Virus record (IMG/VR): IMGVR_UViG_3300037725_000018
Span: 62,001 to 126,000 of that record
Length of the DNA stretch: 64,000 bases
Reading direction: 5' to 3' (one strand)
Position numbers and translations under genes: made by a program. Positions 3,001 through 63,743 of this stretch are shown here, one piece after another. The notes under the pieces were generated by a model. The model was not told where the DNA came from. It made no database searches and saw only the letters and a list, made by a program, of their open reading frames with translations. How positions within the stretch are numbered: the stretch's first letter is position 1; each line of letters starts with the position of its first letter.

Positions 3001-3050
3001 TCAAATGGGTTTTGATCTACCTGCGAAATGTTTTCTATATTTTGAAGCAT
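1..3050 (-). CDS. Large virion structural protein (baseplate/tail-associated), partial, over 1000 aa, runs off the window start
   Basis: ATG at 3050 (MLQNIENISQVDQNPFEPF). The same frame reads NVDYSEFENFVKFSSAKERVLNFEYKL near 2100 and FFKQLQNIIPARSSLTYGSLLEPHFLER near 100. It is absent from the ORF track, consistent with no stop inside the window, and sits in the baseplate cluster. Confidence 0.75.
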   Translation of the reverse strand, partial: MLQNIENISQVDQNPFEPFKGRIVSQRDLKKFGRGKETAFFGDTTSDFLEISVFNQDRQLVDWKNTDSFKIDEEGKLLLPTYRHLDGLDLLNETSYILKYEFLRKVFYPSLPQDFSNIRGPRRRQLLRKNLGSEVGMKLVVDEISQTRQEIRVRPKLIGSEAYDIPFQETFVSFFNQPASGKEFRYVLNFGNDTAFHVVNWTIDRQTFPEYPNSVVLKTYETIPPDVEAGGECWVNEEVFPAYIDRVRFVQKREEEPKTVLRGPDFSVDVDGTDLRDTGVQTWESLLDSQEETSGETIEQIFENEDSVDLNVDYSEFENFVKFSSAKERVLNFEYKLGLIESINQDIDEILVFSGSVANPSNPIEQNKLQRLQDRKSTLIEGLDGFETFLFESEEIRDGNGDLLPTSDTAVQNFLEEYKKEADLYDRNNDSSLQTNLPEYIKTDQRNENFELFISMIGHYFDIIYTYIKHVQYIKDRSEDIDEVESLSKDLTQFITNSFGFEVYNGFSEQDLQKVLLGGENEAEDVQKQIWRRVLNNVPYIGKTKGTRRSVQALLSMYGVPKIGLTIREYGGGSSEADPGFFEYEDETSALEFMGSQNVEIDWTFPDDKVQSIEARFRTEYKGSSDLRILRLESGGGDVLTVDLKKFSSPAVKEEFGYVEMNIGGDTLSVGTGVDKVPIFDGNFNSLNVNYNPDEDFISLRLGKVGELGPYEFDDPKTASEGVTWYFEDFTFDPSFDLSSGDVLFVGESFRGEVDNVKIWRRQLNESKFKEHVLAPYKYDYDNKESILGPERKDLSVGLNRFLYVNLDFSENDLQNESPNQTNPYLGTITENGYIDISEDFVNYNRLNYVTPLKIGSLSNSSTKVRIEESNLLGSLSPTEKRERGEFDLNRKDSNKIGVYFSPNEAVNRDINALVGYDDLNDLLADPENLRRERYKELESLNKKYWEKYPDDIDWNTYFRYIDQFNRAFFKQLQNIIPARSSLTYGSLLEPHFLERYRAKNTGIEKEDLQKETDIN

Positions 3051-3053
3051 CTG

Positions 3054-3308
3054 TTAAGAAATTTCTCGCGTCTGAATTTCTTCGTTAGACTCTTCGGAAA
3101 GCTCGGTAATTTCGGTGTTAACGGTTTTTCGAAGTTCTTCGTAATCATATGTTTGGCGAAGAAGGTCTACTTGAAGTCTTTCGCTTGGGGCTTGCTCTCC
3201 GTCATACTTGATCTCCCCCTTTGGATTACGCTCGTATTCCGATATTGGAGTGTTTTCGGTTTGAATAATTACGTCTTCAAGCCGGGGATCATCTGTTGGA
3301 ACTGCCAT
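3054..3308 (-). CDS. Hypothetical acidic protein in structural operon
   Basis: 84-aa ORF tightly packed between co-oriented genes. Confidence 0.7.
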   Translation of the reverse strand: MAVPTDDPRLEDVIIQTENTPISEYERNPKGEIKYDGEQAPSERLQVDLLRQTYDYEELRKTVNTEITELSEESNEEIQTREIS

Positions 3309-5132: not shown

Positions 5133-7013
5133 TTATTTAGCACTTCCCTTTATATCTCGATCCGGAAACTTGATTTCGAAAACTGAAGGATCTAAAGAGG
5201 GATAAATGATATTGTCTTTTGTTGCCGATTCAATGTCGTATATATTGTCTGAGTAGTCGTCTCCAGTCTTGTTTGTAATTTCAAACCTCGAAACGTTTTG
5301 AACTCCGTCAATTTCGTTAAGCTCCCGGATCACTTGGCCGATAATGATCGGCTCTGCAAACCCTTGATTGTCTATGTCAAACAGGTCTCGAAGCTTCGCT
5401 AAACAACGGGCAAGAACTTGGTTTTTGTTATACGTAGAAAAAACCAAAACCTCAAAATTTATGCCAATATTGACCACGAACCCGTCTTTGATGTTCACCG
5501 CGTCTGTAAGCATCCGGAACTGCCGAAGGTAATTTTTCAAGTTCTGTTTGGTTGCGTCGTTTACAGGAGTAAGTTTTTTGTTATCGTCGTATCCTAAGAC
5601 GTAAAGGTTAATTGCAAGCGGGTTTTCCTCTGTTCGGTTTGTAGATCCGGTTTGAACTTCGTCGTTTGTCACATACGCCTTTGCCACCGAACCGTACCTG
5701 CTTGGCATGTTTAGGCTTCGAACCACGTAGTCTTCTTTTGTCACCGCCCGGTCTTGTGCAGAGAAAAAAGCCCGTGCGTTATTTTTGATTTCTTGAACGG
5801 ACTCCGGACCTCTACCTCCTGTTGCCGGAATCGGGTTTTGAACACTTAGGCTGTCTTGAACGTCTTGGACTTGCTGCTGTTTTGTTGAAGACAGAGCTTC
5901 AAAGTCTTGAACGTCAAAATCCACTTGGTCAACAACCGTCAAATCGCTTTTAGGAACGTTAGAGGACGCTCCACCTCCAGACGAATACTGGACCGTAAGC
6001 GTTGTGTTGTAAGGAACTTGTCCGTATGTATTCGTTTGAAGAAAGTTTGACGGGTCAAGCGGTTCTTCAAGCTGCTGTTCGGGAGTAAGAACCGGGTTTC
6101 CGATGTTTTGTGGGTTTGGAACGATTTCTTCGTTTGGTTTGTCCGAAGCTCCGGAGCCAAACTGAAGAAACACGTCTCCGCTTCTGTCTACTCTTTGGAT
6201 GAATCTTCTTGGGGTTCTTTCAAGTTTCAAAAGAGAACGAACGTCAACGTCGTCTGTGAAGTTCGGGTCAGTAACGTTTGTGTTCTTAAACTCTTGAAAC
6301 GTTGTTTCTTGTGCTAGATACGGCACTTCAAACCAACGGTTTCCATCCGAATCGGTCACTTCAAGAATGTCAATGAAATCGTCGTCTCGAATGAAAATCT
6401 TTTGATACGGCTCTGGAGAACCAAAATCAAATGTTCGCGTCCGAATTTCACCTGCAACAGCCGGAACCGTTTTTGAAAGCAAGTATTGAGTCGGTTCCCC
6501 GGAAATGTCCCGATTGAAAATTTCAACGTTCAAAGGGTCGTCAAACCGATCAATGGTAAAGTCTACTTCTCTTGTTGTCCGAAACGTAACGTCAGGGTTG
6601 CTTGAACTTGTAACGGTCATTCCCTGCTCGATTGTAGGAACCACCGAAAAGTCCGGTTCAAGTTCTCCGGTTTGGCTGTTGTTTCGAACGGGTGCGACAA
6701 CAAAAACTTCAATCTCTGTTTGTGCGGGTCTGTTTTGTTTGGGAGTATACCCAAGGACTTGCGCTAAGTCCCGGACGTTCTCTTCTTCTTCAGCGTATTG
6801 AATTAAGTTCTCTCTAAACTGCTGGTCTGTGTAGTAGGAAAGAACGTCACCAACATAAGATGAAAGCTCGATAAAGACATTTCCGATGCTTTCTTCGGAG
6901 AAGTCTTGATACGTCTCCGGGAAGTACGTCTTCGTAAATTCGATTAAACCGTCTTTGATTGAATCAAAGTCGCGGTTGAGATATCGAATGTCTTTTGAAT
7001 TTTCGTTGGGCAT
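5133..7013 (-). CDS. Baseplate wedge subunit (T4 gp6 / baseplate J-like)
   Basis: YLNRDFDSIK..L, DFSE.S.G..FIEL.SYVGDVLSYY, FGSG, GG.GPES..EIK.NA and QDRAVTKEDY motifs. Confidence 0.9.
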   Translation of the reverse strand: MPNENSKDIRYLNRDFDSIKDGLIEFTKTYFPETYQDFSEESIGNVFIELSSYVGDVLSYYTDQQFRENLIQYAEEEENVRDLAQVLGYTPKQNRPAQTEIEVFVVAPVRNNSQTGELEPDFSVVPTIEQGMTVTSSSNPDVTFRTTREVDFTIDRFDDPLNVEIFNRDISGEPTQYLLSKTVPAVAGEIRTRTFDFGSPEPYQKIFIRDDDFIDILEVTDSDGNRWFEVPYLAQETTFQEFKNTNVTDPNFTDDVDVRSLLKLERTPRRFIQRVDRSGDVFLQFGSGASDKPNEEIVPNPQNIGNPVLTPEQQLEEPLDPSNFLQTNTYGQVPYNTTLTVQYSSGGGASSNVPKSDLTVVDQVDFDVQDFEALSSTKQQQVQDVQDSLSVQNPIPATGGRGPESVQEIKNNARAFFSAQDRAVTKEDYVVRSLNMPSRYGSVAKAYVTNDEVQTGSTNRTEENPLAINLYVLGYDDNKKLTPVNDATKQNLKNYLRQFRMLTDAVNIKDGFVVNIGINFEVLVFSTYNKNQVLARCLAKLRDLFDIDNQGFAEPIIIGQVIRELNEIDGVQNVSRFEITNKTGDDYSDNIYDIESATKDNIIYPSLDPSVFEIKFPDRDIKGSAK

Positions 7014-29641: not shown

Positions 29642-29708
29642 ATAAGTCAAGGGTGACTCTACCAAAGTCCATTTAATCGGCAACTTACCGACCCTTGAAA
29701 AATAAAAC

Positions 29709-29829
29709 AGACTGCAATTGATTTAGTGCTCTGCCAGTTGAGCTACCCGTCCAAAAGCGGACGGGGTAGGACTCGAACCTACAACCTCTCCTTCCATGTA
29801 GGATATCAATGGATTGCTGTATGCAGCCT
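29709..29829 (-). ncRNA. ACAGCA-motif RNA 4 (circularly permuted tRNA-like domain)
   Basis: Stem AGGCTGCA/TGCAGTCT, TACAGCAA, T-arm GTAGG-TTCGAGT-CCTAC, acceptor CCCGTCC/GGACGGG closed by GCTTTT, then TA-GCTC-AACTGGCA-GAGC D-arm. Confidence 0.85.
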
Positions 29830-31560: not shown

Positions 31561-32220
31561 TCACCCGTACTGGCTTACGCCTTCAAACATATCATACCGA
31601 AGCTTCGCATATGGAAGTGTGTCGATATCGGAAGGCTTAGGATGGGTGAACATGATTCCTTCTACATAGGCATTGTTTTCATGCGCCTCTTGAAAAGACG
31701 TTCCGTGAAACGTCGAATAAAACAGAGGAATCAACCCGTTTTCAAACCAGCTTTCAATTGCGTCGAACGTCTTCGGGTACTTTCCCCAACTTTCGTATTG
31801 AAGCTTTCTTCGGCTATAAGAGCTAAAAGGAATCCAGATGTGTTCGTTTAGGTCATAAGGGTTTCCTTGAACTTTCGGGCCAACGACTTCCCCAAAGTGT
31901 TGACCGTCTGTTAGCGTTTCAACATACCCACGATCTACAGAATTTCGAATTGCATCTGTGATCCTACGGTCCCCATGAAAAGCAGGAACCCGGTTCTTTC
32001 GGTTCATAACTTGAACAATTTGCCCGTTTTGAATCAAAACAGACACGTTTGTTCCGTCAATTTTTTCAATTGCCATTGTACGCGGATCATTAAAAACCCA
32101 ATCGTAGCTATTGCCGTTGTCGTCTGTGTTTACTTCGTCAACGACAAAGTATCCACCGTTTCGCTCTTCACGAACAAACGGCGAATGAATCTTCGGCATG
32201 TCTCGCATAAAAGACTGCAT
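31561..32220 (-). CDS. RNA ligase-like nucleotidyltransferase (start moved off the tRNA-Ile overlap)
   Basis: EKIDGTN (KxDG), GEVVGPKVQGNP, EGIMF and AKLR ligase motifs. Confidence 0.8.
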   Translation of the reverse strand: MQSFMRDMPKIHSPFVREERNGGYFVVDEVNTDDNGNSYDWVFNDPRTMAIEKIDGTNVSVLIQNGQIVQVMNRKNRVPAFHGDRRITDAIRNSVDRGYVETLTDGQHFGEVVGPKVQGNPYDLNEHIWIPFSSYSRRKLQYESWGKYPKTFDAIESWFENGLIPLFYSTFHGTSFQEAHENNAYVEGIMFTHPKPSDIDTLPYAKLRYDMFEGVSQYG

Positions 32221-32269
32221 ATAGAATTGACGTAGCCTTTTAATTAAGCAAATATAAAGAGAGTTTTTG

Positions 32270-32343
32270 TTGTCCCGGTAGGATTTGAACCTACGGCACA
32301 CGATGTATCAGACCGATGCTCTACCAGACTGAGCTACGGGACA
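32270..32343 (-). tRNA. tRNA-Ile(GAT)
   Basis: Cloverleaf, loop CTGATAC. Confidence 0.88.
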
Positions 32344-32905: not shown

Positions 32906-33191
32906 GGTTTCAAAATCCAAATCGGATTTGAAAATAAGATAGAGAACTGCAGAAACAAAAAGTAAGAAAAGGTATGGTCCGGTCATTTTTGATTTAAATC
33001 GAGAGAACAAGGATTGCAATGATGAAAAGAACCACCACAAGAACGCCAAGTCCAAGTGCAACCTTGGAAATTGTGTTCTCGGTAAGCTCATCTTTTACGT
33101 CTTCGAAGCTGTCTAGATCGTTTGGTTCTTGCATAATAAAAGGCGTCTAAGCTATAAGAATGGATTCTAAGGCGTAACAGTTAACGTTTAG

Positions 33192-33277
33192 TACCGGAGA
33201 CGGGACTCGAACCCGTACGCCCGTTAAAGAGCATCAGATCCTTAATCTGACCTGTCTTCCAATTCCAGCACTCCGGT
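33192..33277 (-). tRNA. tRNA-Leu(AAG)
   Basis: Class II cloverleaf, TCAGA-TTAAGGA-TCTGA. Confidence 0.88.
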
Positions 33278-33286
33278 ATAAATGAC

Positions 33287-33574
33287 CGATTTTTTTCGTT
33301 TGGCGGCTCAACAAATTTAAATGGCGCTAGACGCCAGCATAATTCATTGTCCACATACTGTACAAATCATGAAAATTAATGAACAAACAATCACAAGATA
33401 CTCTTTACGGAAGTAAATCACTCTTCCGGTTGAGCCGCCAAACGAAAAAAACCGATCAAGATTCCCTCTGGTTGGTGGCTCAACATATGCCATAGCATGA
33501 ACACCAATTCACAATACTAATAAATTTACGGAAGTAAATCACTCTTCCGGTTGAGCCACCAACCGGAGGGAACC
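33287..33574 (-). ncRNA. Two tandem long-stem RNAs (33287-33454 and 33460-33574) with an identical 33-nt core
   Basis: Terminal inverted repeats of about 25 bp; shared TTTACGGAAGTAAATCACTCTTCCGGTTGAGCC at 33404-33436 and 33525-33557. Confidence 0.7.
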
Positions 33575-33633
33575 TATTCCCTCCTTTTTACTCACTTGGG
33601 TTTAACTTACGTCGTGCCCAAGTGTTTCAAAGA

Positions 33634-34059
33634 TTACTCGACTTCAATCTTCTTCGTGACCTCTTCATCTTGACCACTCTTAGGAACAGAAACGGTCAAG
33701 ACTCCACGGTCAAGAGAAGCGGAAATCGAATCCGCTTCCATACTTGGTTGAAGCCGAATGCTCCAAGAACGGCTTACCTGTGATTGACCACGGATTACCG
33801 TTCCTTCGTTGCCTGACTCTTTTTCGGTCGAGTCAGACATTTGGACTCTCAAAACGTTGTCTTTGGTTACTTCAACGCTTACGTCTTCCCGGTCAATTCC
33901 GGGAACATCAAAACCGATTTCATATCGGTCGTCATATTCGACAATCCGATAATCACTTCGGTTTTGGCGAGTAAGTCCGTTGAAGATATCATCAAAGAAA
34001 TTATCGAAACGAGAGATTCGGTTGTTTCGATTCATCGTAGGGACAACAGAGTTTGTCAT
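33634..34059 (-). CDS. Small heat-shock protein (Hsp20/alpha-crystallin)
   Basis: DVPGIDREDVSVEV and ISASLDRGVLTVSVPK. Confidence 0.92.
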   Translation of the reverse strand: MTNSVVPTMNRNNRISRFDNFFDDIFNGLTRQNRSDYRIVEYDDRYEIGFDVPGIDREDVSVEVTKDNVLRVQMSDSTEKESGNEGTVIRGQSQVSRSWSIRLQPSMEADSISASLDRGVLTVSVPKSGQDEEVTKKIEVE

Positions 34060-35702: not shown

Positions 35703-35856
35703 GAGAATGTTGCATCCACCACCTTAGCGGGATTCGAACCCGCGACTACCGCAATCTAGCGCGGCACTCTGACCTACCTGAGTTATAAGGTGTCACCAAC
35801 GGCGGTGGGATTCGAACCCACAGATACCGATCAAGCACCGTTACAGCAACATTCTC
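35703..35856 (-). ncRNA. Double tRNA-like RNA enclosed in an 11-bp stem
   Basis: GAGAATGTTGC/GCAACATTCTC encloses an anticodon-less mini-tRNA and a cloverleaf (35719-35792) with a 6-nt loop. Confidence 0.7.
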
Positions 35857-36480: not shown

Positions 36481-36651
36481 TTGACAAGCGGTGTGCTTTT
36501 ACGCCAAATCGCGAGAGTATTAATCACAGGACGCCTTACCAGTTACGGGGTGCGCTCTCACTTCGTTGACAGCCATCTATTTTCACATACGCGGTCAACG
36601 GCGAACTCTTTAAAGGATGGATGCTTCTAATCCCACCTTCCGCTTTGTCAA
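36481..36651 (-). ncRNA. 23S rRNA H43/H44 (L11-binding domain) mimic RNA
   Basis: GGTGGGA-TTAGAAGCA-TCCATCC-TTTAAAGAGT...GCGTAAAAGC-ACAC closed by TTGACAA..GCGG/CCGC-TTGTCAA. Confidence 0.75.
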
Positions 36652-40336: not shown

Positions 40337-41812
40337 TTACACGCGAACCATGTCGTAACGATCATCCATGATCGTATTCAACGTAATTTGAATCGGGGTA
40401 ATGTTTTGGCCGGAAAGAATGTTCTTCATAATTGACGGGCTAAATCCGCTCACAAGAGCAGCTCCGCTTTCGGAAAACCGAACCGGATTATTCCCGCTAT
40501 CATCTAGGTTCCAAAACACAATGTTTGGGGCTTCGTATCCAGCTTTTTCGTACTTCTCCCGGACCATGTTCATCGCAGACACCGAACGCCCATCAATATT
40601 GTATGAATCAAACTGCATGTCGGACATAACAAGAATTGTTTCCGGCATTTGGTTTTCGGGTACGTTTCTGCTTTTTGCAAAGGAAAGCAAGCTTTCAAAC
40701 ATCGCAGAAATGTTTGTATTCATTCCCCAAGAAATTTCGTTTAGGCTTTCTACCCGATCTCGGAGATTTGAGCCTCCGATTTCAACGAAACTTGGGTTTT
40801 CGCTAAACGTCACAACCCGGTTTTGAAATGGTCCGGTGTTGTGCTCTGCCGTGTAAAGTCCAAGCCCGATAGCAACGTCAATCGGCCTTGTGGACGAGTT
40901 AGAGTTATAGGAAGCAGTCATGCTTCCGGACACGTCAACAACGGATAGAACATTATCTTCCATCCACACAGGAAGGTTCTTCCACTGCCCTTCAAGTTGC
41001 TTTAGCTCTTTGTCTCCGATAGAAGAGCCGCTTCCAAAAGCATTTCGGGATTGAAGAATGGGCTTGACAATTTCATGTGGAAAAATCGCCCCCGCACTCA
41101 TTTTTGTGTCTGTAGATTCGTCAAGCACGTCGTCTAGGTAAGCTTCAAAACGATCTTCGTCGTTTCGAACAAATGCATTCCGATACTTCCGGATTGCTTG
41201 AGATGGAACAGACTCGTAATCAATGCTATCCCAATTTTCTTCGCACATGTCCTGTTCAACTACGTCACGAAGACCGGACACAAGCTTTCTGTACCGCTTA
41301 GAGCGGTTTCCTACACTTCCACTATCAAACATGTGGTCACGGAGATCCGTAAACATGTCGTGGTCGGACTTGCCTTCAGACGGTGCCCACTTCGCCGCAA
41401 GACTGTCTCCGGACTCCAAGGCTTTTTCATAAAAATTCAAAGCGTCTTCATACACTTCGGTTCCCTTCGTTGAGTGAAGAACATCGTCCCAACGCCCGTA
41501 TTCGGGAATTAGATCAAGGTTTTTTCGGGCCGTTTCTGGATCGTTCTCTGCAAGCCACCGGAACATAATCCGAAACGTTCGCCGCTCTCCTTGTCCCCCG
41601 CGAATGTCGCGGTTATAGAAAAGTGACCGAAGAGCACCTTCCTTCGTTTCTTGATACGCCTTTCGAAAAAGGTCTTCGATGTATTCCGGGTCTTTTGAGC
41701 GAGACGCGCCCATAGAGAAGAAAAGATCCACAAGGTCTTTGCCGCTTGTGGAATGGGTCTTCATCCCATTTTCGGTCGTCTCGTCGTAAATTCCGGTTAG
41801 AATCTTGTTCAT
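40337..41812 (-). CDS. DUF2828-family helical plus vWA protein (Ro60/TROVE-like architecture)
   Basis: TTENGM, RDIRGGQGER, YGRWDD, AKWAP, MIDAS DVSGSM, WGMNTN, SDMQFD, VFWNL, VSGFSP. Confidence 0.9.
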   Translation of the reverse strand: MNKILTGIYDETTENGMKTHSTSGKDLVDLFFSMGASRSKDPEYIEDLFRKAYQETKEGALRSLFYNRDIRGGQGERRTFRIMFRWLAENDPETARKNLDLIPEYGRWDDVLHSTKGTEVYEDALNFYEKALESGDSLAAKWAPSEGKSDHDMFTDLRDHMFDSGSVGNRSKRYRKLVSGLRDVVEQDMCEENWDSIDYESVPSQAIRKYRNAFVRNDEDRFEAYLDDVLDESTDTKMSAGAIFPHEIVKPILQSRNAFGSGSSIGDKELKQLEGQWKNLPVWMEDNVLSVVDVSGSMTASYNSNSSTRPIDVAIGLGLYTAEHNTGPFQNRVVTFSENPSFVEIGGSNLRDRVESLNEISWGMNTNISAMFESLLSFAKSRNVPENQMPETILVMSDMQFDSYNIDGRSVSAMNMVREKYEKAGYEAPNIVFWNLDDSGNNPVRFSESGAALVSGFSPSIMKNILSGQNITPIQITLNTIMDDRYDMVRV

Positions 41813-50809: not shown

Positions 50810-50896
50810 CGGAGAGCGGAGGCATCGAACCTCAAGATTTTTCAATCTCCATCTGATTTCGAATCAGCGATAGGTGCCAAACCTACGTCACTCTCC
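50810..50896 (-). tRNA. tRNA-Ser(CGA), atypical
   Basis: Loop TTCGAAA, long variable arm, extended D-stem. Confidence 0.75.
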
Positions 50897-50900
50897 ACAG

Positions 50901-63280: not shown

Positions 63281-63329
63281 AGAATATAGACATTAATATT
63301 TGAATTGAAAACAGATAAAAATTTTATAG

Positions 63330-63743
63330 TGGACCCGGCGGGATTCGAACCCGCGTCCGCAGCACCTTTGCAACATCGGTTGTCACAGTCTTAGAATGGT
63401 CTTTATTTTTGACCGACAGACTATTGTATTAGACCACACAAAAGTTTGTGGGTTTTATTTCAACCCGCTATCGGACTTGTTTTACGTTCTGCCTACCAAG
63501 CAAAACAAGTTGAAGCCCAGTAGGAATATCCGATGGTGTGTGCCTTACTCTCTATCGGAGTCGAGAAGTAAGGCTGCAGTTACGCCGCAAGAGAAGCGCC
63601 GAAGTGCTCCTCCATGTTGACGCCTGCAGGAACGCGGTTAACGTTGCCAAGTATTGATTCCGTCAGTTATTTTATGCCCACCTAACGGTAAGGGCAGACT
63701 GCCGACCTTGCTCCGCGTGCTACGTCGAAGCCGTGTCAGGCCC
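63330..63743 (-). ncRNA. ssrA: tmRNA
   Basis: 5' GGGCCTGACACGGCTTCGAC, 3' GGACGCGGGTTCGAATCCCGCCGGGTCCA, G3:U70; tag frame 63648-63580 GNVNRVPAGVNMEEHFGASLAA*. Confidence 0.92.

What the first reader, a model, noticed from the sequence alone, without database searches (positions are those of the whole stretch)
33287..33574. Tandem long-stem RNAs with constant scaffold and variable U/G-rich loop
Seen: two adjacent units are each closed by a near-perfect stem of about 25 bp. The outer halves differ completely yet still pair, and the inner GG(C/U)GGCUCAAC/GUUGAGCC(G/A)CC shows a compensatory change. Both contain the identical hairpin CGGAAG-AGUGAUUUA-CUUCCG-UAAA, followed by a variable single-stranded region (about 90 and 40 nt) sharing AGUAU..UGUGA.UUG..UGUUCAU. 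The loops are complementary to several ATG-containing tracts (for example ATGAAAATTAATGAACAAACAATC). Inference: a scaffold-plus-guide/antisense or protein-decoy RNA family, possibly excised by RNase III.
Basis: partly seen in the sequence, partly recalled or inferred. Interest (0 to 1): 0.75.

Follow-up and report, generated by a model that had tools for sequence, protein, structure and literature searches.

The report
Paired long-stem RNAs in phage tRNA array
Two neighbouring, previously undescribed structured small RNAs sit between a heat-shock gene and a tRNA in a 223 kb uncultured tidal-flat phage that also encodes a Ro60-like RNA-binding protein, so they may be a new kind of Y-RNA-like partner, though neither expression nor binding could be tested here.

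Summary
The structure is real. Two abutting units (33459-33575 and 33283-33458, read on the minus strand) are each closed by a 26 or 30 bp helix with a 6 bp hairpin stacked directly on it. Each has a 44 or 95 nt variable insert. They are the only long inverted repeats in the 223 kb phage genome.

Seven stem pairs change on both sides. G.U wobbles favour the minus strand, which carries hsp20 and all 40 tRNAs.

Across strains the unit B stem arms are invariant. Its interior changes fast, largely by exchange with unit A. The "identical 33-nt core" is specific to this strain.

The claimed complementarity to ATG tracts is only the locus's own opposite strand. No antisense target exceeds chance in the phage genome.

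No Rfam family matches, and no homologue was found outside this lineage.

New context: a Ro60 structural homologue lies 6.8 kb upstream on the same strand, and a YrlA-like tRNA mimic lies 3.5 kb downstream.

Best reading: co-transcribed RNAs, probably released by host RNase III and RNase P, that serve as protein-binding scaffolds. They may be non-canonical Y-RNA-like partners of the phage Ro60, but they lack the canonical Ro-binding motif. Function remains inferred.

The parts
33459..33575 (-). Unit B (117 nt). 5' arm 33550-33575 and 3' arm 33459-33484 form the 26 bp helix P1. P2 hairpin is 33529-33549 (6 bp stem, 9 nt loop). The variable interior is 33485-33528.
   Evidence: Inverted repeat I2. 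MFE fold. Model match at 118.8 bits. Stem arms invariant across strains while the interior varies.
33283..33458 (-). Unit A (176 nt). 5' arm 33429-33458 and 3' arm 33283-33312 form the 30 bp helix P1. P2 hairpin is 33408-33428. The interior is 33313-33407 and includes a small hairpin at 33322-33336.
   Evidence: Inverted repeat I1. Fold. One compensatory C-G to U-A change and several G.U to Watson-Crick changes among strains.
33191..33277 (-). tRNA-Leu(AAG). It starts 5 nt after the end of unit A, so RNase P cleavage here would define unit A's 3' end.
   Evidence: ARAGORN and Rfam. 100% conserved among strains.
33634..34059 (-). hsp20 gene, immediately upstream. No minus-strand terminator lies between it and unit B, so co-transcription is inferred.
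   Evidence: Pfam HSP20, E = 1e-15. Terminator scan.
33565..33584 (.). 8 bp hairpin (GGAGGGAA / UUCCCUCC) that overlaps the first bases of unit B's 5' arm. On the minus strand it is an alternative pairing for that arm. On the plus strand it is followed by a U-run and looks like a terminator.
   Evidence: Conserved in all strains.
40337..41812 (-). Ro60 structural homologue (Pfam DUF2828 + DUF7788, with a vWA-like C-terminal domain). It is the candidate protein partner.
   Evidence: PHROG 850, E = 1e-128. Pfam. AF2 model pLDDT 85.7, pTM 0.83. Top 13 PDB matches are all Ro60, TM about 0.6 over the full length. Mycobacteriophage homologues are annotated 'Ro-like RNA binding protein'.
29699..29822 (-). 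YrlA-like tRNA-mimic RNA, the probable canonical-type Y RNA of this phage. It is context, not part of the two units.
   Evidence: RF02553 full-length match, 40.5 bits, E = 9e-8 locally, with good T-arm and D-arm. The control in mycobacteriophage Rose5 scores 36.4 bits beside its Ro-like gene.
31561..32301 (-). RNA-ligase-domain gene (PF09414), 1 kb downstream in the same array. RNA-repair context.

Best explanation
The two units are paralogous structured small RNAs, transcribed on the minus strand as part of the hsp20 / tRNA polycistron.

Shape: in each unit the 26-30 bp helix P1 and the 6 bp hairpin P2 join with no linker. Together they should stack into one rod of 32-36 bp, with a 44-95 nt variable insert on the 3' strand. 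This is a stem-bulge-stem layout.

Biogenesis (inferred): host RNase III cuts the perfect P1 helices. This uncouples the hsp20 mRNA from the tRNA precursor and releases the units. RNase P cleavage at tRNA-Leu, 5 nt downstream, sets unit A's 3' end.

Function (inferred): what stays constant is the inner 11 bp of P1 and the P2 stem. The P2 loop and the insert are exchangeable. That pattern fits a protein-binding scaffold. The most likely partner is the phage's own Ro60 homologue, which would make these non-tRNA-like, Y-RNA-like RNAs accompanying the YrlA-like RNA in the same array.

Shown: the structure, its covariation, its uniqueness in the genome, the strand bias, and the Ro60 fold of the nearby protein.
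Inferred: transcription, RNase III and RNase P processing, and Ro60 binding.

My estimates: functional RNA-level structure about 0.85; RNase III processing about 0.6; Ro60 partner about 0.3.
For: Structure:
- z = -12.9 against shuffles.
- 98.3% of stem cells pair, against 51% or less when slid. Seven pairs change on both sides.
- One compensatory change and several G.U to Watson-Crick changes occur among strains of unit A.
- These are the only long inverted repeats in 223 kb.

Strand:
- All 40 tRNAs, the tmRNA and hsp20 are on the minus strand.
- The minus strand folds 15 kcal/mol better than the plus strand.
- The unit A wobbles pair only on the minus strand.

Scaffold pattern:
- Unit B stem arms and tRNA-Leu are 100% identical across strains. 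The unit B interior is 74-89% identical. hsp20 is 96.5% identical.

Ro60 link:
- The protein at 40337-41812 is a full-length Ro60 fold.
- It lies on the same strand, in the same tRNA and RNA-repair array.
- A YrlA-like RNA is present, and a positive control behaves the same way.
- The literature defines Y RNAs as a long 5'/3' stem plus a large internal loop, usually two or more per genome. One is often a long hairpin that escapes homology search (PMC4201824).
- Thermus phage phiLo Ro60 binds two adjacent phage-encoded Y-like RNAs (PMC12135203).
- Long-stem RNAs with a constant closing stem and a variable interior recur in the tRNA arrays of other Ro-like-encoding phages.
Against: - No transcript data. 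No RNA run was listed for this sequence.
- Neither unit has the GNCGAA(N)G / CGAA Ro-binding motif. The stems have no bulge.
- The Ro60 gene is 6.8 kb away, further than the roughly 2 kb reported for characterised bacterial Y RNAs.
- A better Y RNA candidate already exists at 29699-29822.
- The model finds no homologue beside 80 other Ro-like genes (1.37 Mb), nor in the nearest GenBank phage.
- In other phages the long-stem elements track tRNA 3' ends, so their link to Ro60 may only reflect shared residence in tRNA arrays.
- Covariation rests on few independent events: one paralogue split plus a few strain changes.
- A perfect 26-30 bp helix would be cut by RNase III, which is not how known Y RNAs mature.
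Confidence: 0.4

Rival explanations
1. Purely cis-acting processing and stability cassette. The two helices exist only as RNase III sites. They separate the hsp20 mRNA from the downstream tRNA precursor and leave protective stem stubs. The excised pieces have no function of their own.
For: - Perfect helices longer than 22 bp sit exactly between an mRNA and a tRNA and abut each other.
- The outer stem sequence is free to vary as long as it pairs.
- Long-stem spacers flush with tRNA ends are common in other phage tRNA arrays.
- The interior is poorly conserved.
Against: - It does not explain why the inner 11 bp of P1 and the flush P2 hairpin stem are kept in both paralogues and in every strain.
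- It does not explain why two units are maintained.
- It does not explain why none of the other roughly 40 tRNA junctions in this genome has such a helix.
Confidence: 0.25
2. Trans-acting antisense or guide RNAs. The variable interiors pair with host or competitor transcripts.
For: - Constant scaffold with a variable interior that diverges faster than its flanks.
- The host genome is unknown, so host targets cannot be excluded.
Against: - No complementarity above chance to the phage genome.
- None to its tRNAs, tmRNA or YrlA-like RNA.
- The quoted 'targets' were the locus's own opposite strand.
- Interior differences are mostly segments swapped between units A and B.
- No guide-using effector gene (Cas, TnpB/IscB, Argonaute) was noticed among the neighbours scanned.
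Confidence: 0.1
3. Decoy for a host defence or nuclease that recognises double-stranded RNA or a specific hairpin. Examples are an RNA anti-CRISPR mimicking a host repeat, or a sponge for a dsRNA sensor or RNase.
For: - Exceptionally long perfect duplexes and a conserved hairpin stem.
- The neighbourhood is rich in counter-defence style RNA-repair genes: RNA ligase, CCA-adding enzyme, CYTH and a 2H-like phosphoesterase.
Against: - The host and its CRISPR repeats are unknown.
- The hairpin loop is not conserved among strains.
- No match to the scaffold in 185,579 prokaryotic species genomes beyond the number expected by chance.
Confidence: 0.1
4. The functional transcript is on the plus strand. 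It would be an antisense small RNA ending at the terminator-like hairpin plus U-run at 33565-33584.
For: - A plus-strand terminator-like site lies immediately after unit B.
- The palindromic stems fold on either strand, z = -15.5 for the plus strand.
- Unit B's mismatch and wobble are neutral between the strands.
Against: - There are no plus-strand genes nearby.
- The only plus-strand promoter-like match is weak, and promoter matches are below chance for the region.
- Unit A's four wobble positions would be A.C mismatches on the plus strand.
- The plus strand folds 15 kcal/mol worse.
Confidence: 0.07
5. DNA-level element: a miniature transposon, a cruciform or origin, or a recombination site.
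For: - Long inverted repeats.
- HNH endonuclease genes occur in the array.
- Assemblers break contigs at the repeats.
Against: - One locus only. There are no dispersed copies in this genome or in any collection searched.
- The outer ends differ between the units while pairing is kept, the opposite of transposase-recognised ends.
- No target-site duplication is visible.
- Strand-asymmetric wobbles.
- No reverse transcriptase for a retron-type element.
Confidence: 0.05
6. Tiny Cys-rich or hydrophobic peptides are encoded in the interiors. Unit A would give GUG..VIVCSLIFMICTVCGQ*. Unit B would give (M)NWCSC...
For: - A start codon with an AAAGAG stretch 6 nt upstream in unit A and in some unit B variants.
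- A stop-to-stop change (UGA to UAA) and one synonymous AAC/AAU change among strains.
Against: - The unit B frame is broken by 4-nt and 11-nt indels among strains, giving products of 10 versus about 34 residues that run through the stem.
- Most in-frame changes in unit A are non-synonymous, for example Ile to Arg.
- U/G-rich sequence yields Cys codons by composition alone.
Confidence: 0.03

Closest known systems
Bacterial and phage Y RNAs of the non-tRNA-like kind (Salmonella and M. smegmatis YrlB, Deinococcus Yrn2, Thermus phage phiLo Yrl1/Yrl2)
   Same: - A long stem formed by the 5' and 3' ends, a large internal loop or bulge, and a stem-bulge-stem layout.
- Size of about 100-180 nt.
- Two or more per genome, side by side and processed from one precursor.
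- Same strand as a Ro60 gene.
- They accompany a tRNA-like YrlA.
- They evolve too fast for homology search (PMC4201824, PMC12135203).
   Different: - No GNCGAA(N)G / CGAA motif and no bulged helix.
- The stems are perfect and much longer.
- The conserved part of the stem is next to the loop rather than near the termini.
- 6.8 kb from the Ro60 gene.
- The partner protein is the divergent DUF2828-type Ro60, which does not reach the Pfam TROVE model.
- Binding is untested.
Phage T4 RNAC and RNAD (species 1 and 2 stable RNAs)
   Same: Two small RNAs side by side. They abut a tRNA gene inside the tRNA cluster of a large myovirus, lie on the same strand as the tRNAs, and have unknown function (PMC3014915, PMC9697503).
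   Different: - No sequence or structural similarity. RNAC has a T-arm and no long closing helix. RNAD folds no better than shuffles.
- My model does not match them.
- In T4 they lie downstream of the tRNA. Here they lie upstream.
RNase III processing helices (rRNA operon spacer stems, T7 early-region R sites)
   Same: Helices of 20 bp or more formed by sequences that flank a released RNA, placed between cistrons of a polycistronic transcript.
   Different: - The enclosed RNAs here are not rRNA or mRNA.
- Both units keep an internal hairpin module.
- T7 sites carry internal loops that direct single-strand cuts, whereas these stems are perfect.
- Cleavage is not demonstrated.
Long-stem spacers of other Ro-like-encoding phage tRNA arrays
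   Same: - A 20-24 bp near-perfect closing stem of constant sequence, a variable multi-hairpin interior, and several copies per array.
- Same strand as the tRNAs, within 10 kb of a Ro-like gene.
   Different: - Unrelated in sequence. My model does not detect them.
- They begin exactly at a tRNA's 3' ACCA, whereas the window's units precede a tRNA.
- They are themselves uncharacterised, as far as I could find.

Membership tests
Y RNA (Ro60 partner RNA) | Long stem formed by the 5' and 3' ends, enclosing a large internal loop | tested here: met
   P1 helices of 26 and 30 bp enclose 65 and 116 nt. Pairing is supported by covariation.
Y RNA (Ro60 partner RNA) | Ro60-binding motif (GNCGAA(N)G in bacteria, CGAA in phiLo Yrls, GGUCCGA in animals) in a bulged helix near the 5' end | tested here: not met
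   No GNCGAA(N)G or GGUCCGA in either unit. One CGAA occurs only in unit A's paired 3' arm. There is no bulge.
Y RNA (Ro60 partner RNA) | Encoded close to a Ro60 gene on the same strand | tested here: inconclusive
   A Ro60 fold homologue is present on the same strand. It lies 6.8 kb upstream, with tRNAs and other genes between. Characterised bacterial Y RNAs lie within about 2 kb.
Y RNA (Ro60 partner RNA) | Physical association with Ro60, and dependence on it for stability | not testable with these tools
   Needs gel-shift or co-purification assays. No RNA data were available.
YrlA (Rfam RF02553, tRNA-like Y RNA) | Match to the covariance model, with T-arm and D-arm modules | tested here: not met
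   No YrlA match over the units at E up to 10. The D-arm-like GCUC...GAGU seen in this strain is lost in unit B of related strains. The separate element at 29699-29822 does match.
RNase III substrate | About two turns (20 bp or more) of uninterrupted double-stranded RNA | tested here: met
   30 bp and 26 bp helices, the latter with one mismatch.
RNase III substrate | Cleavage by RNase III in vivo or in vitro | not testable with these tools
   No transcript ends are available. The phage encodes no RNase III, so it would have to be the host enzyme.
Retron non-coding RNA (msr/msd) | Adjacent reverse transcriptase gene | tested here: not met
   No RVT_1 match anywhere in the 223 kb genome. The controls did ring.
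Miniature inverted-repeat transposable element | Multiple dispersed copies with conserved terminal repeats and target-site duplications | tested here: not met
   Only this locus in the genome. None in the viral, metagenome or prokaryote collections. The outermost stem sequences differ between the units.
CRISPR mini-array or RNA anti-CRISPR | Direct repeats matching a host CRISPR repeat | not testable with these tools
   The host is unknown. The units are inverted-repeat hairpins rather than repeat-spacer-repeat. The scaffold is absent from 185,579 species genomes.
Type III toxin-antitoxin antitoxin RNA (ToxI-like) | Tandem direct repeats of about 36 nt next to a ToxN-family toxin gene | tested here: not met
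   The units are 117 and 176 nt hairpins. The neighbours are hsp20 and tRNA-Leu.
T4 RNAC/RNAD | Sequence or structure homology to T4 species 1 and 2 RNAs | tested here: not met
   The folds differ. Model R2 gives no significant match in the T4 tRNA region with filters off.

The most novel reading that the evidence does not exclude
The units are founding members of an unrecognised class of phage RNAs: rod-shaped scaffolds embedded in tRNA arrays, with swappable interiors. In this reading they are the missing non-tRNA-like Y RNAs of the widespread DUF2828-type phage Ro60 proteins, which occur in more than 700 sequenced phages. They would tether or gate host nucleases such as PNPase during infection, and different interiors would recruit different partners. 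The ACCA-stem elements in other phages' tRNA arrays would be their functional counterparts.
Probability: 0.2. Interest if true: 0.75.

Novelty: new variant of a known kind. Interest (0 to 1): 0.55.

Why it matters
Large phages commonly carry tRNA arrays, RNA-repair enzymes and a Ro60-like protein. More than 700 GenBank phages match this one, yet the RNA partners of these proteins are known for only a handful of phages.

Small stable RNAs made from phage tRNA clusters (T4 RNAC and RNAD) have had no known function for about fifty years.

This is a structurally well-defined RNA pair with covariation support, sitting in such an array next to a Ro60 homologue. Together with the recurrence of long-stem RNAs in other such arrays, it gives a concrete, testable candidate for what these RNAs do.

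If the Ro60 link fails, the element is still a clean example of a phage-specific processing module that current annotation misses entirely.

Tried and rejected
1. Rfam at gathering and at permissive thresholds: nothing over the units.
2. Exact and degenerate core patterns in viral contigs, metagenome contigs and prokaryote genomes. These gave only chance matches with no closing stem and no model hit.
3. Covariance models R1 and R2 gave no homologue in any of these:
   - the nearest GenBank phage, LR756508.1;
   - 86 loci around Ro-like genes;
   - four contigs found through RNA-ligase homologues;
   - the T4 tRNA region.
4. Relatives through Ro-like and RNA-ligase proteins. The 86%-identity Ro-like contig stops short of the locus. 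The RNA-ligase homologues at about 60% identity sit in unrelated phages.
5. tRNA-mimic reading of the 5' part (GCUC-AACCGGAA-GAGU looks like a D-arm). Rejected, because unit B in related strains loses the 3' half while keeping the competing hairpin.
6. Antisense to the phage genome, tRNAs, tmRNA or YrlA-like RNA: no better than shuffles. The 11-bp match to the tRNA-Leu variable arm (I7) is within chance.
7. Retron: no reverse transcriptase.
8. Micro-ORFs: the frames are not conserved.
9. Expression: no RNA run was listed. Laying DNA contigs gave only the variants already seen.
Full report
WHAT THE WINDOW IS. The window is bases 62001-126000 of a 223,357-bp IMG/VR virus record with 43% G+C, judged complete. 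It carries 40 tRNA genes and a tmRNA, all on the minus strand, as are nearly all long ORFs. Baseplate and DNA-metabolism matches indicate a large myovirus. Near-identical DNA occurs in tidal-flat metagenomes. No GenBank phage is close at the DNA level.

CHECK OF THE OBSERVATION. Read on the minus strand, two units abut with no spacer.
- Unit B is 33575 to 33459 (117 nt).
- Unit A is 33458 to 33283 (176 nt).
- Each is closed by a long helix, P1. In unit B it is 26 bp with one C.A mismatch. In unit A it is 30 bp, all paired as RNA with two G.U.
- A hairpin, P2, follows the 5' arm with no linker. It has a 6 bp stem (CGGAAG/CUUCCG) and a 9 nt loop.
- Next come UAAA and an interior of 44 nt (unit B) or 95 nt (unit A). 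The interior contains small hairpins and runs directly into the 3' arm.

The 301-nt stretch folds at -134.4 kcal/mol, against -73.7 +/- 4.7 for shuffles (z = -12.9). The 33-nt core is found exactly twice, with none expected by chance. A scan of the whole genome for inverted repeats with arms of 18 bp or more and loops of 300 nt or less returns these two units and nothing else. The structural observation is therefore real and exceptional.

One sub-claim is not real. The 'ATG-containing tracts' said to be complementary to the loops are the plus strand of the same locus (33369-33392). With the locus masked, the loops' best complementarity elsewhere in the genome is 13 and 11 nt, which is typical of shuffled loops.

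RELATIVES AND COVARIATION. Searching the neighbouring hsp20 protein found two near-identical proteins. Their seven contigs come from related strains. A covariance model of the two units finds both units in every contig that reaches the locus.

Within unit A, the window differs from the other strains in the outer stem in three ways:
- a fully compensatory change, C5-G172 to U-A;
- U.G to U-A;
- G.U to G-C.

One lineage (L007/L010) has two further U-A to U.G changes. Pooling seven distinct variants of both units gives these results:
- 98.3% of stem cells pair, against 31-51% when the 3' partner is slid by 1-3 columns.
- Seven pairs change on both sides: six between the paralogues and one among strains.
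- No shuffle out of 500 reaches the observed covariation score.

The independent events are few, but they all point the same way.

STRAND. Each transition in a Watson-Crick pair gives a G.U on one strand and an A.C on the other. In unit A, four of four such changes give G.U on the minus strand. Unit B is neutral, with one of each. The minus strand folds 15 kcal/mol better, and it is the strand of hsp20 and every tRNA. A plus-strand terminator-like hairpin with a U-run lies just after unit B (33565-33584). I therefore keep a plus-strand transcript as a low-probability rival.

WHAT IS CONSTANT AND WHAT VARIES.

| Segment | Identity across strains |
|---|---|
| Unit B stem arms (52 nt) | 100% |
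| tRNA-Leu | 100% |
| hsp20 coding sequence | 96.5% |
| Unit B interior plus P2 loop | 74-89%, with 4-nt and 11-nt indels |

- Laying contigs from four more runs placed every unit B difference inside 33486-33544.
- The P2 loop of unit B is AGUGAUUUA in the window, identical to unit A. In other strains it is AUUAACACA or AUUAAUGCA. Conversely, some strains carry unit A's UAAAGAGUAUCGU segment in unit B.
- The units therefore exchange segments. The 'identical 33-nt core' is a recent conversion in this strain.
- What is truly constant in both paralogues and all strains is the inner 11 bp of P1 (GGYGGCUCAAC / GUUGAGCCRCC), the P2 stem and its flush junction, YAAA, and short U/G-rich motifs.

WHAT IT IS NOT.
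- No Rfam family matches, even at E up to 10.
- It is not a tRNA mimic. The D-arm-like reading fails in related strains.
- It is not a retron. There is no reverse transcriptase in the genome.
- It is not a mobile DNA element. It occupies a single locus, there are no copies in any collection, and the terminal sequences differ between the units.
- It is unlikely to be coding. The small Cys-rich frames are broken by indels among strains.
- It shows no antisense relation to anything in the phage. No pairing with the genome, the 40 tRNAs, the tmRNA or the YrlA-like RNA exceeds that of shuffled interiors.

THE UNEXPECTED CONTEXT. A 491-aa gene lies 6.8 kb upstream on the same strand (40337-41812).
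- It matches PHROG 850, 'RNA-binding protein' (E = 1e-128), and Pfam DUF2828 + DUF7788. It does not match the Pfam TROVE model.
- A confident AlphaFold model (pLDDT 85.7, pTM 0.83) has Ro60 structures as its 13 best PDB matches. These are Xenopus, human, Deinococcus Rsr and Thermus phage phiLo Ro60, aligned over the full length at TM about 0.6. Only vWA domains follow.
- Homologues occur in 711 GenBank phage records. Those in cluster-E-type mycobacteriophages are annotated 'Ro-like RNA binding protein'.

Ro60 proteins work with Y RNAs. The permissive Rfam scan found a full-length YrlA match at 29699-29822 on the minus strand. It scores 40.5 bits, below the curated 69, and has well-matched T-arm and D-arm modules. 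As a control, mycobacteriophage Rose5 gives a 36.4-bit YrlA match about 125 nt after its Ro-like gene, and locus L101 gives 34.1 bits just before its gene. Scores of this size are therefore what phage YrlA RNAs give. This phage thus has a Ro60 homologue and a tRNA-like Y RNA in the same array. The array also holds an RNA-ligase-domain gene, a CCA-adding enzyme, a CYTH protein and a weak 2H-phosphoesterase match. The same neighbourhood of tRNA array, Ro-like gene and RNA ligases is seen in Aeromonas phage Aeh1 and Listeria phage AG20.

ARE THE TWO UNITS Y RNAs? The literature gives the defining features.
- A GNCGAA(N)G motif near the 5' end.
- A location near Ro60 on the same strand.
- Two or more per species, of which one is tRNA-like and another a long hairpin that homology searches miss (PMC4201824).
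- In Thermus phage phiLo, Ro60 binds two phage-encoded Y-like RNAs that lie side by side. They have a stem-bulge-stem layout and can bridge to host PNPase (PMC12135203).

The units meet the architectural and arrangement criteria. They fail the motif criterion, and they lie further from the gene than usual. The model finds nothing similar beside 80 other Ro-like genes. I therefore do not file them as Y RNAs. I hold 'Y-RNA-like partner of the phage Ro60' as the most specific functional hypothesis, at roughly 0.3.

A BROADER PATTERN. A generic scan of those 80 loci (1.25 Mb) found 33 long-stem elements. Many belong to one family.
- Their 5' arm is ACCAUAUUGAAA..., forming a 20-24 bp closing stem.
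- Their interiors are variable and multi-hairpin.
- There are several copies per locus, and they fold well (z about -5 to -8).
- Each begins exactly at the 3' ACCA of a tRNA.

Long-stem RNAs with a constant closing stem and a variable interior are thus a recurrent, apparently undescribed component of phage tRNA arrays that also hold Ro-like genes. This cuts both ways. It makes the window's units part of a wider phenomenon. It also shows that the link to Ro60 could be indirect, because both simply live in tRNA arrays. T4's RNAC and RNAD are the classical positional analogue, being tandem, abutting a tRNA and of unknown function. They are structurally unrelated.

MECHANISM I COMMIT TO. The units are co-transcribed with hsp20 and tRNA-Leu. 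No minus-strand terminator intervenes. Host RNase III cuts the perfect P1 helices, and RNase P cuts 5 nt after unit A. Together these cuts uncouple the mRNA from the tRNA and release two rod-shaped RNAs. The constant inner-P1/P2 module is a protein-binding platform, most likely for the phage Ro60 homologue. The exchangeable interior presents single-stranded U/G-rich sequence to a second factor. Only the structure, its conservation pattern and the protein fold are shown here. Transcription, processing and binding are inferred. The main rival is that the helices are processing signals only, with nothing more to them.

VERDICT. This is a real, exceptional, lineage-specific pair of structured RNAs that current libraries miss. 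The most informative new fact is the Ro60 / YrlA / RNA-repair context. Interest is moderate to high. The function remains open but can be tested directly.

Noticed in passing
window 40337-41812 (-): A 491-aa DUF2828 + DUF7788 protein is a full-length structural homologue of Ro60, although it does not match the Pfam TROVE model. Homologues occur in 711 GenBank phage records, usually beside tRNA arrays and RNA ligases.
   Followed up: yes
window 29699-29822 (-): Sub-threshold but full-length YrlA (tRNA-like Y RNA) match of 40.5 bits, with good T-arm and D-arm. It is comparable to the 36.4-bit match beside the Ro-like gene of mycobacteriophage Rose5 (L019:5523-5631).
   Followed up: partly
window 36591-36640 (-): A 50-nt stretch in a tRNA-array gap aligns with high posterior probability to large-subunit rRNA model positions 1182-1231 (E = 2.5e-5). 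By my recollection this corresponds to the L11-binding GTPase-associated centre. It may be a phage-encoded rRNA-domain mimic or decoy.
   Followed up: partly
L062:3577-3712, L063:1966-2063 and 3028-3127, L068:6290-6398, L101:4000-4089 and 5721-5893, and others: A multi-copy family of long-stem RNAs in the tRNA arrays of other Ro-like-encoding phages. The constant 20-24 bp closing stem starts at the upstream tRNA's 3' ACCA (ACCAUAUUGAAA...), and the interiors vary. There is no Rfam match.
   Followed up: partly
L020:11878-12142 (Aeromonas phage Aeh1, NC_005260): Two abutting, unannotated tRNA-like elements with D-arm and T-arm motifs, closed by extended 14 and 19 bp stems. They lie just upstream of an odd 122-nt 'tRNA-Val' and 2.5 kb downstream of the Ro-like gene.
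   Followed up: partly
L021:1744-2212 (Listeria phage AG20, NC_020871): Two copies of a nested, AT-rich long hairpin (up to 26 bp arms) at the head of the tRNA array, 6 kb upstream of the Ro-like gene. z = -9 against shuffles.
   Followed up: no
window 33565-33584 (+): An 8 bp GC-rich hairpin followed by UUUUU on the plus strand looks like an intrinsic terminator, although no plus-strand gene lies upstream. On the minus strand the same bases compete with the start of unit B's stem.
   Followed up: partly
window 35719-35792 (-) and 50810-50897 (-): One tRNA-like gene that ARAGORN cannot assign (it reports a two-base anticodon). A second element matches tRNA-Sec below threshold (40.6 bits against a cut-off of 47).
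   Followed up: no
window 63329-63743 (-): Phage-encoded tmRNA with an unusually long predicted tag peptide ending in ...GASLAA.
   Followed up: no
window 33397-33407 and 33225-33235 (-): The conserved UAAAGAGUAUC after P2 of unit A can form 11 contiguous pairs with the variable-arm region of the adjacent tRNA-Leu. A systematic duplex test against shuffles found this within chance.
   Followed up: yes
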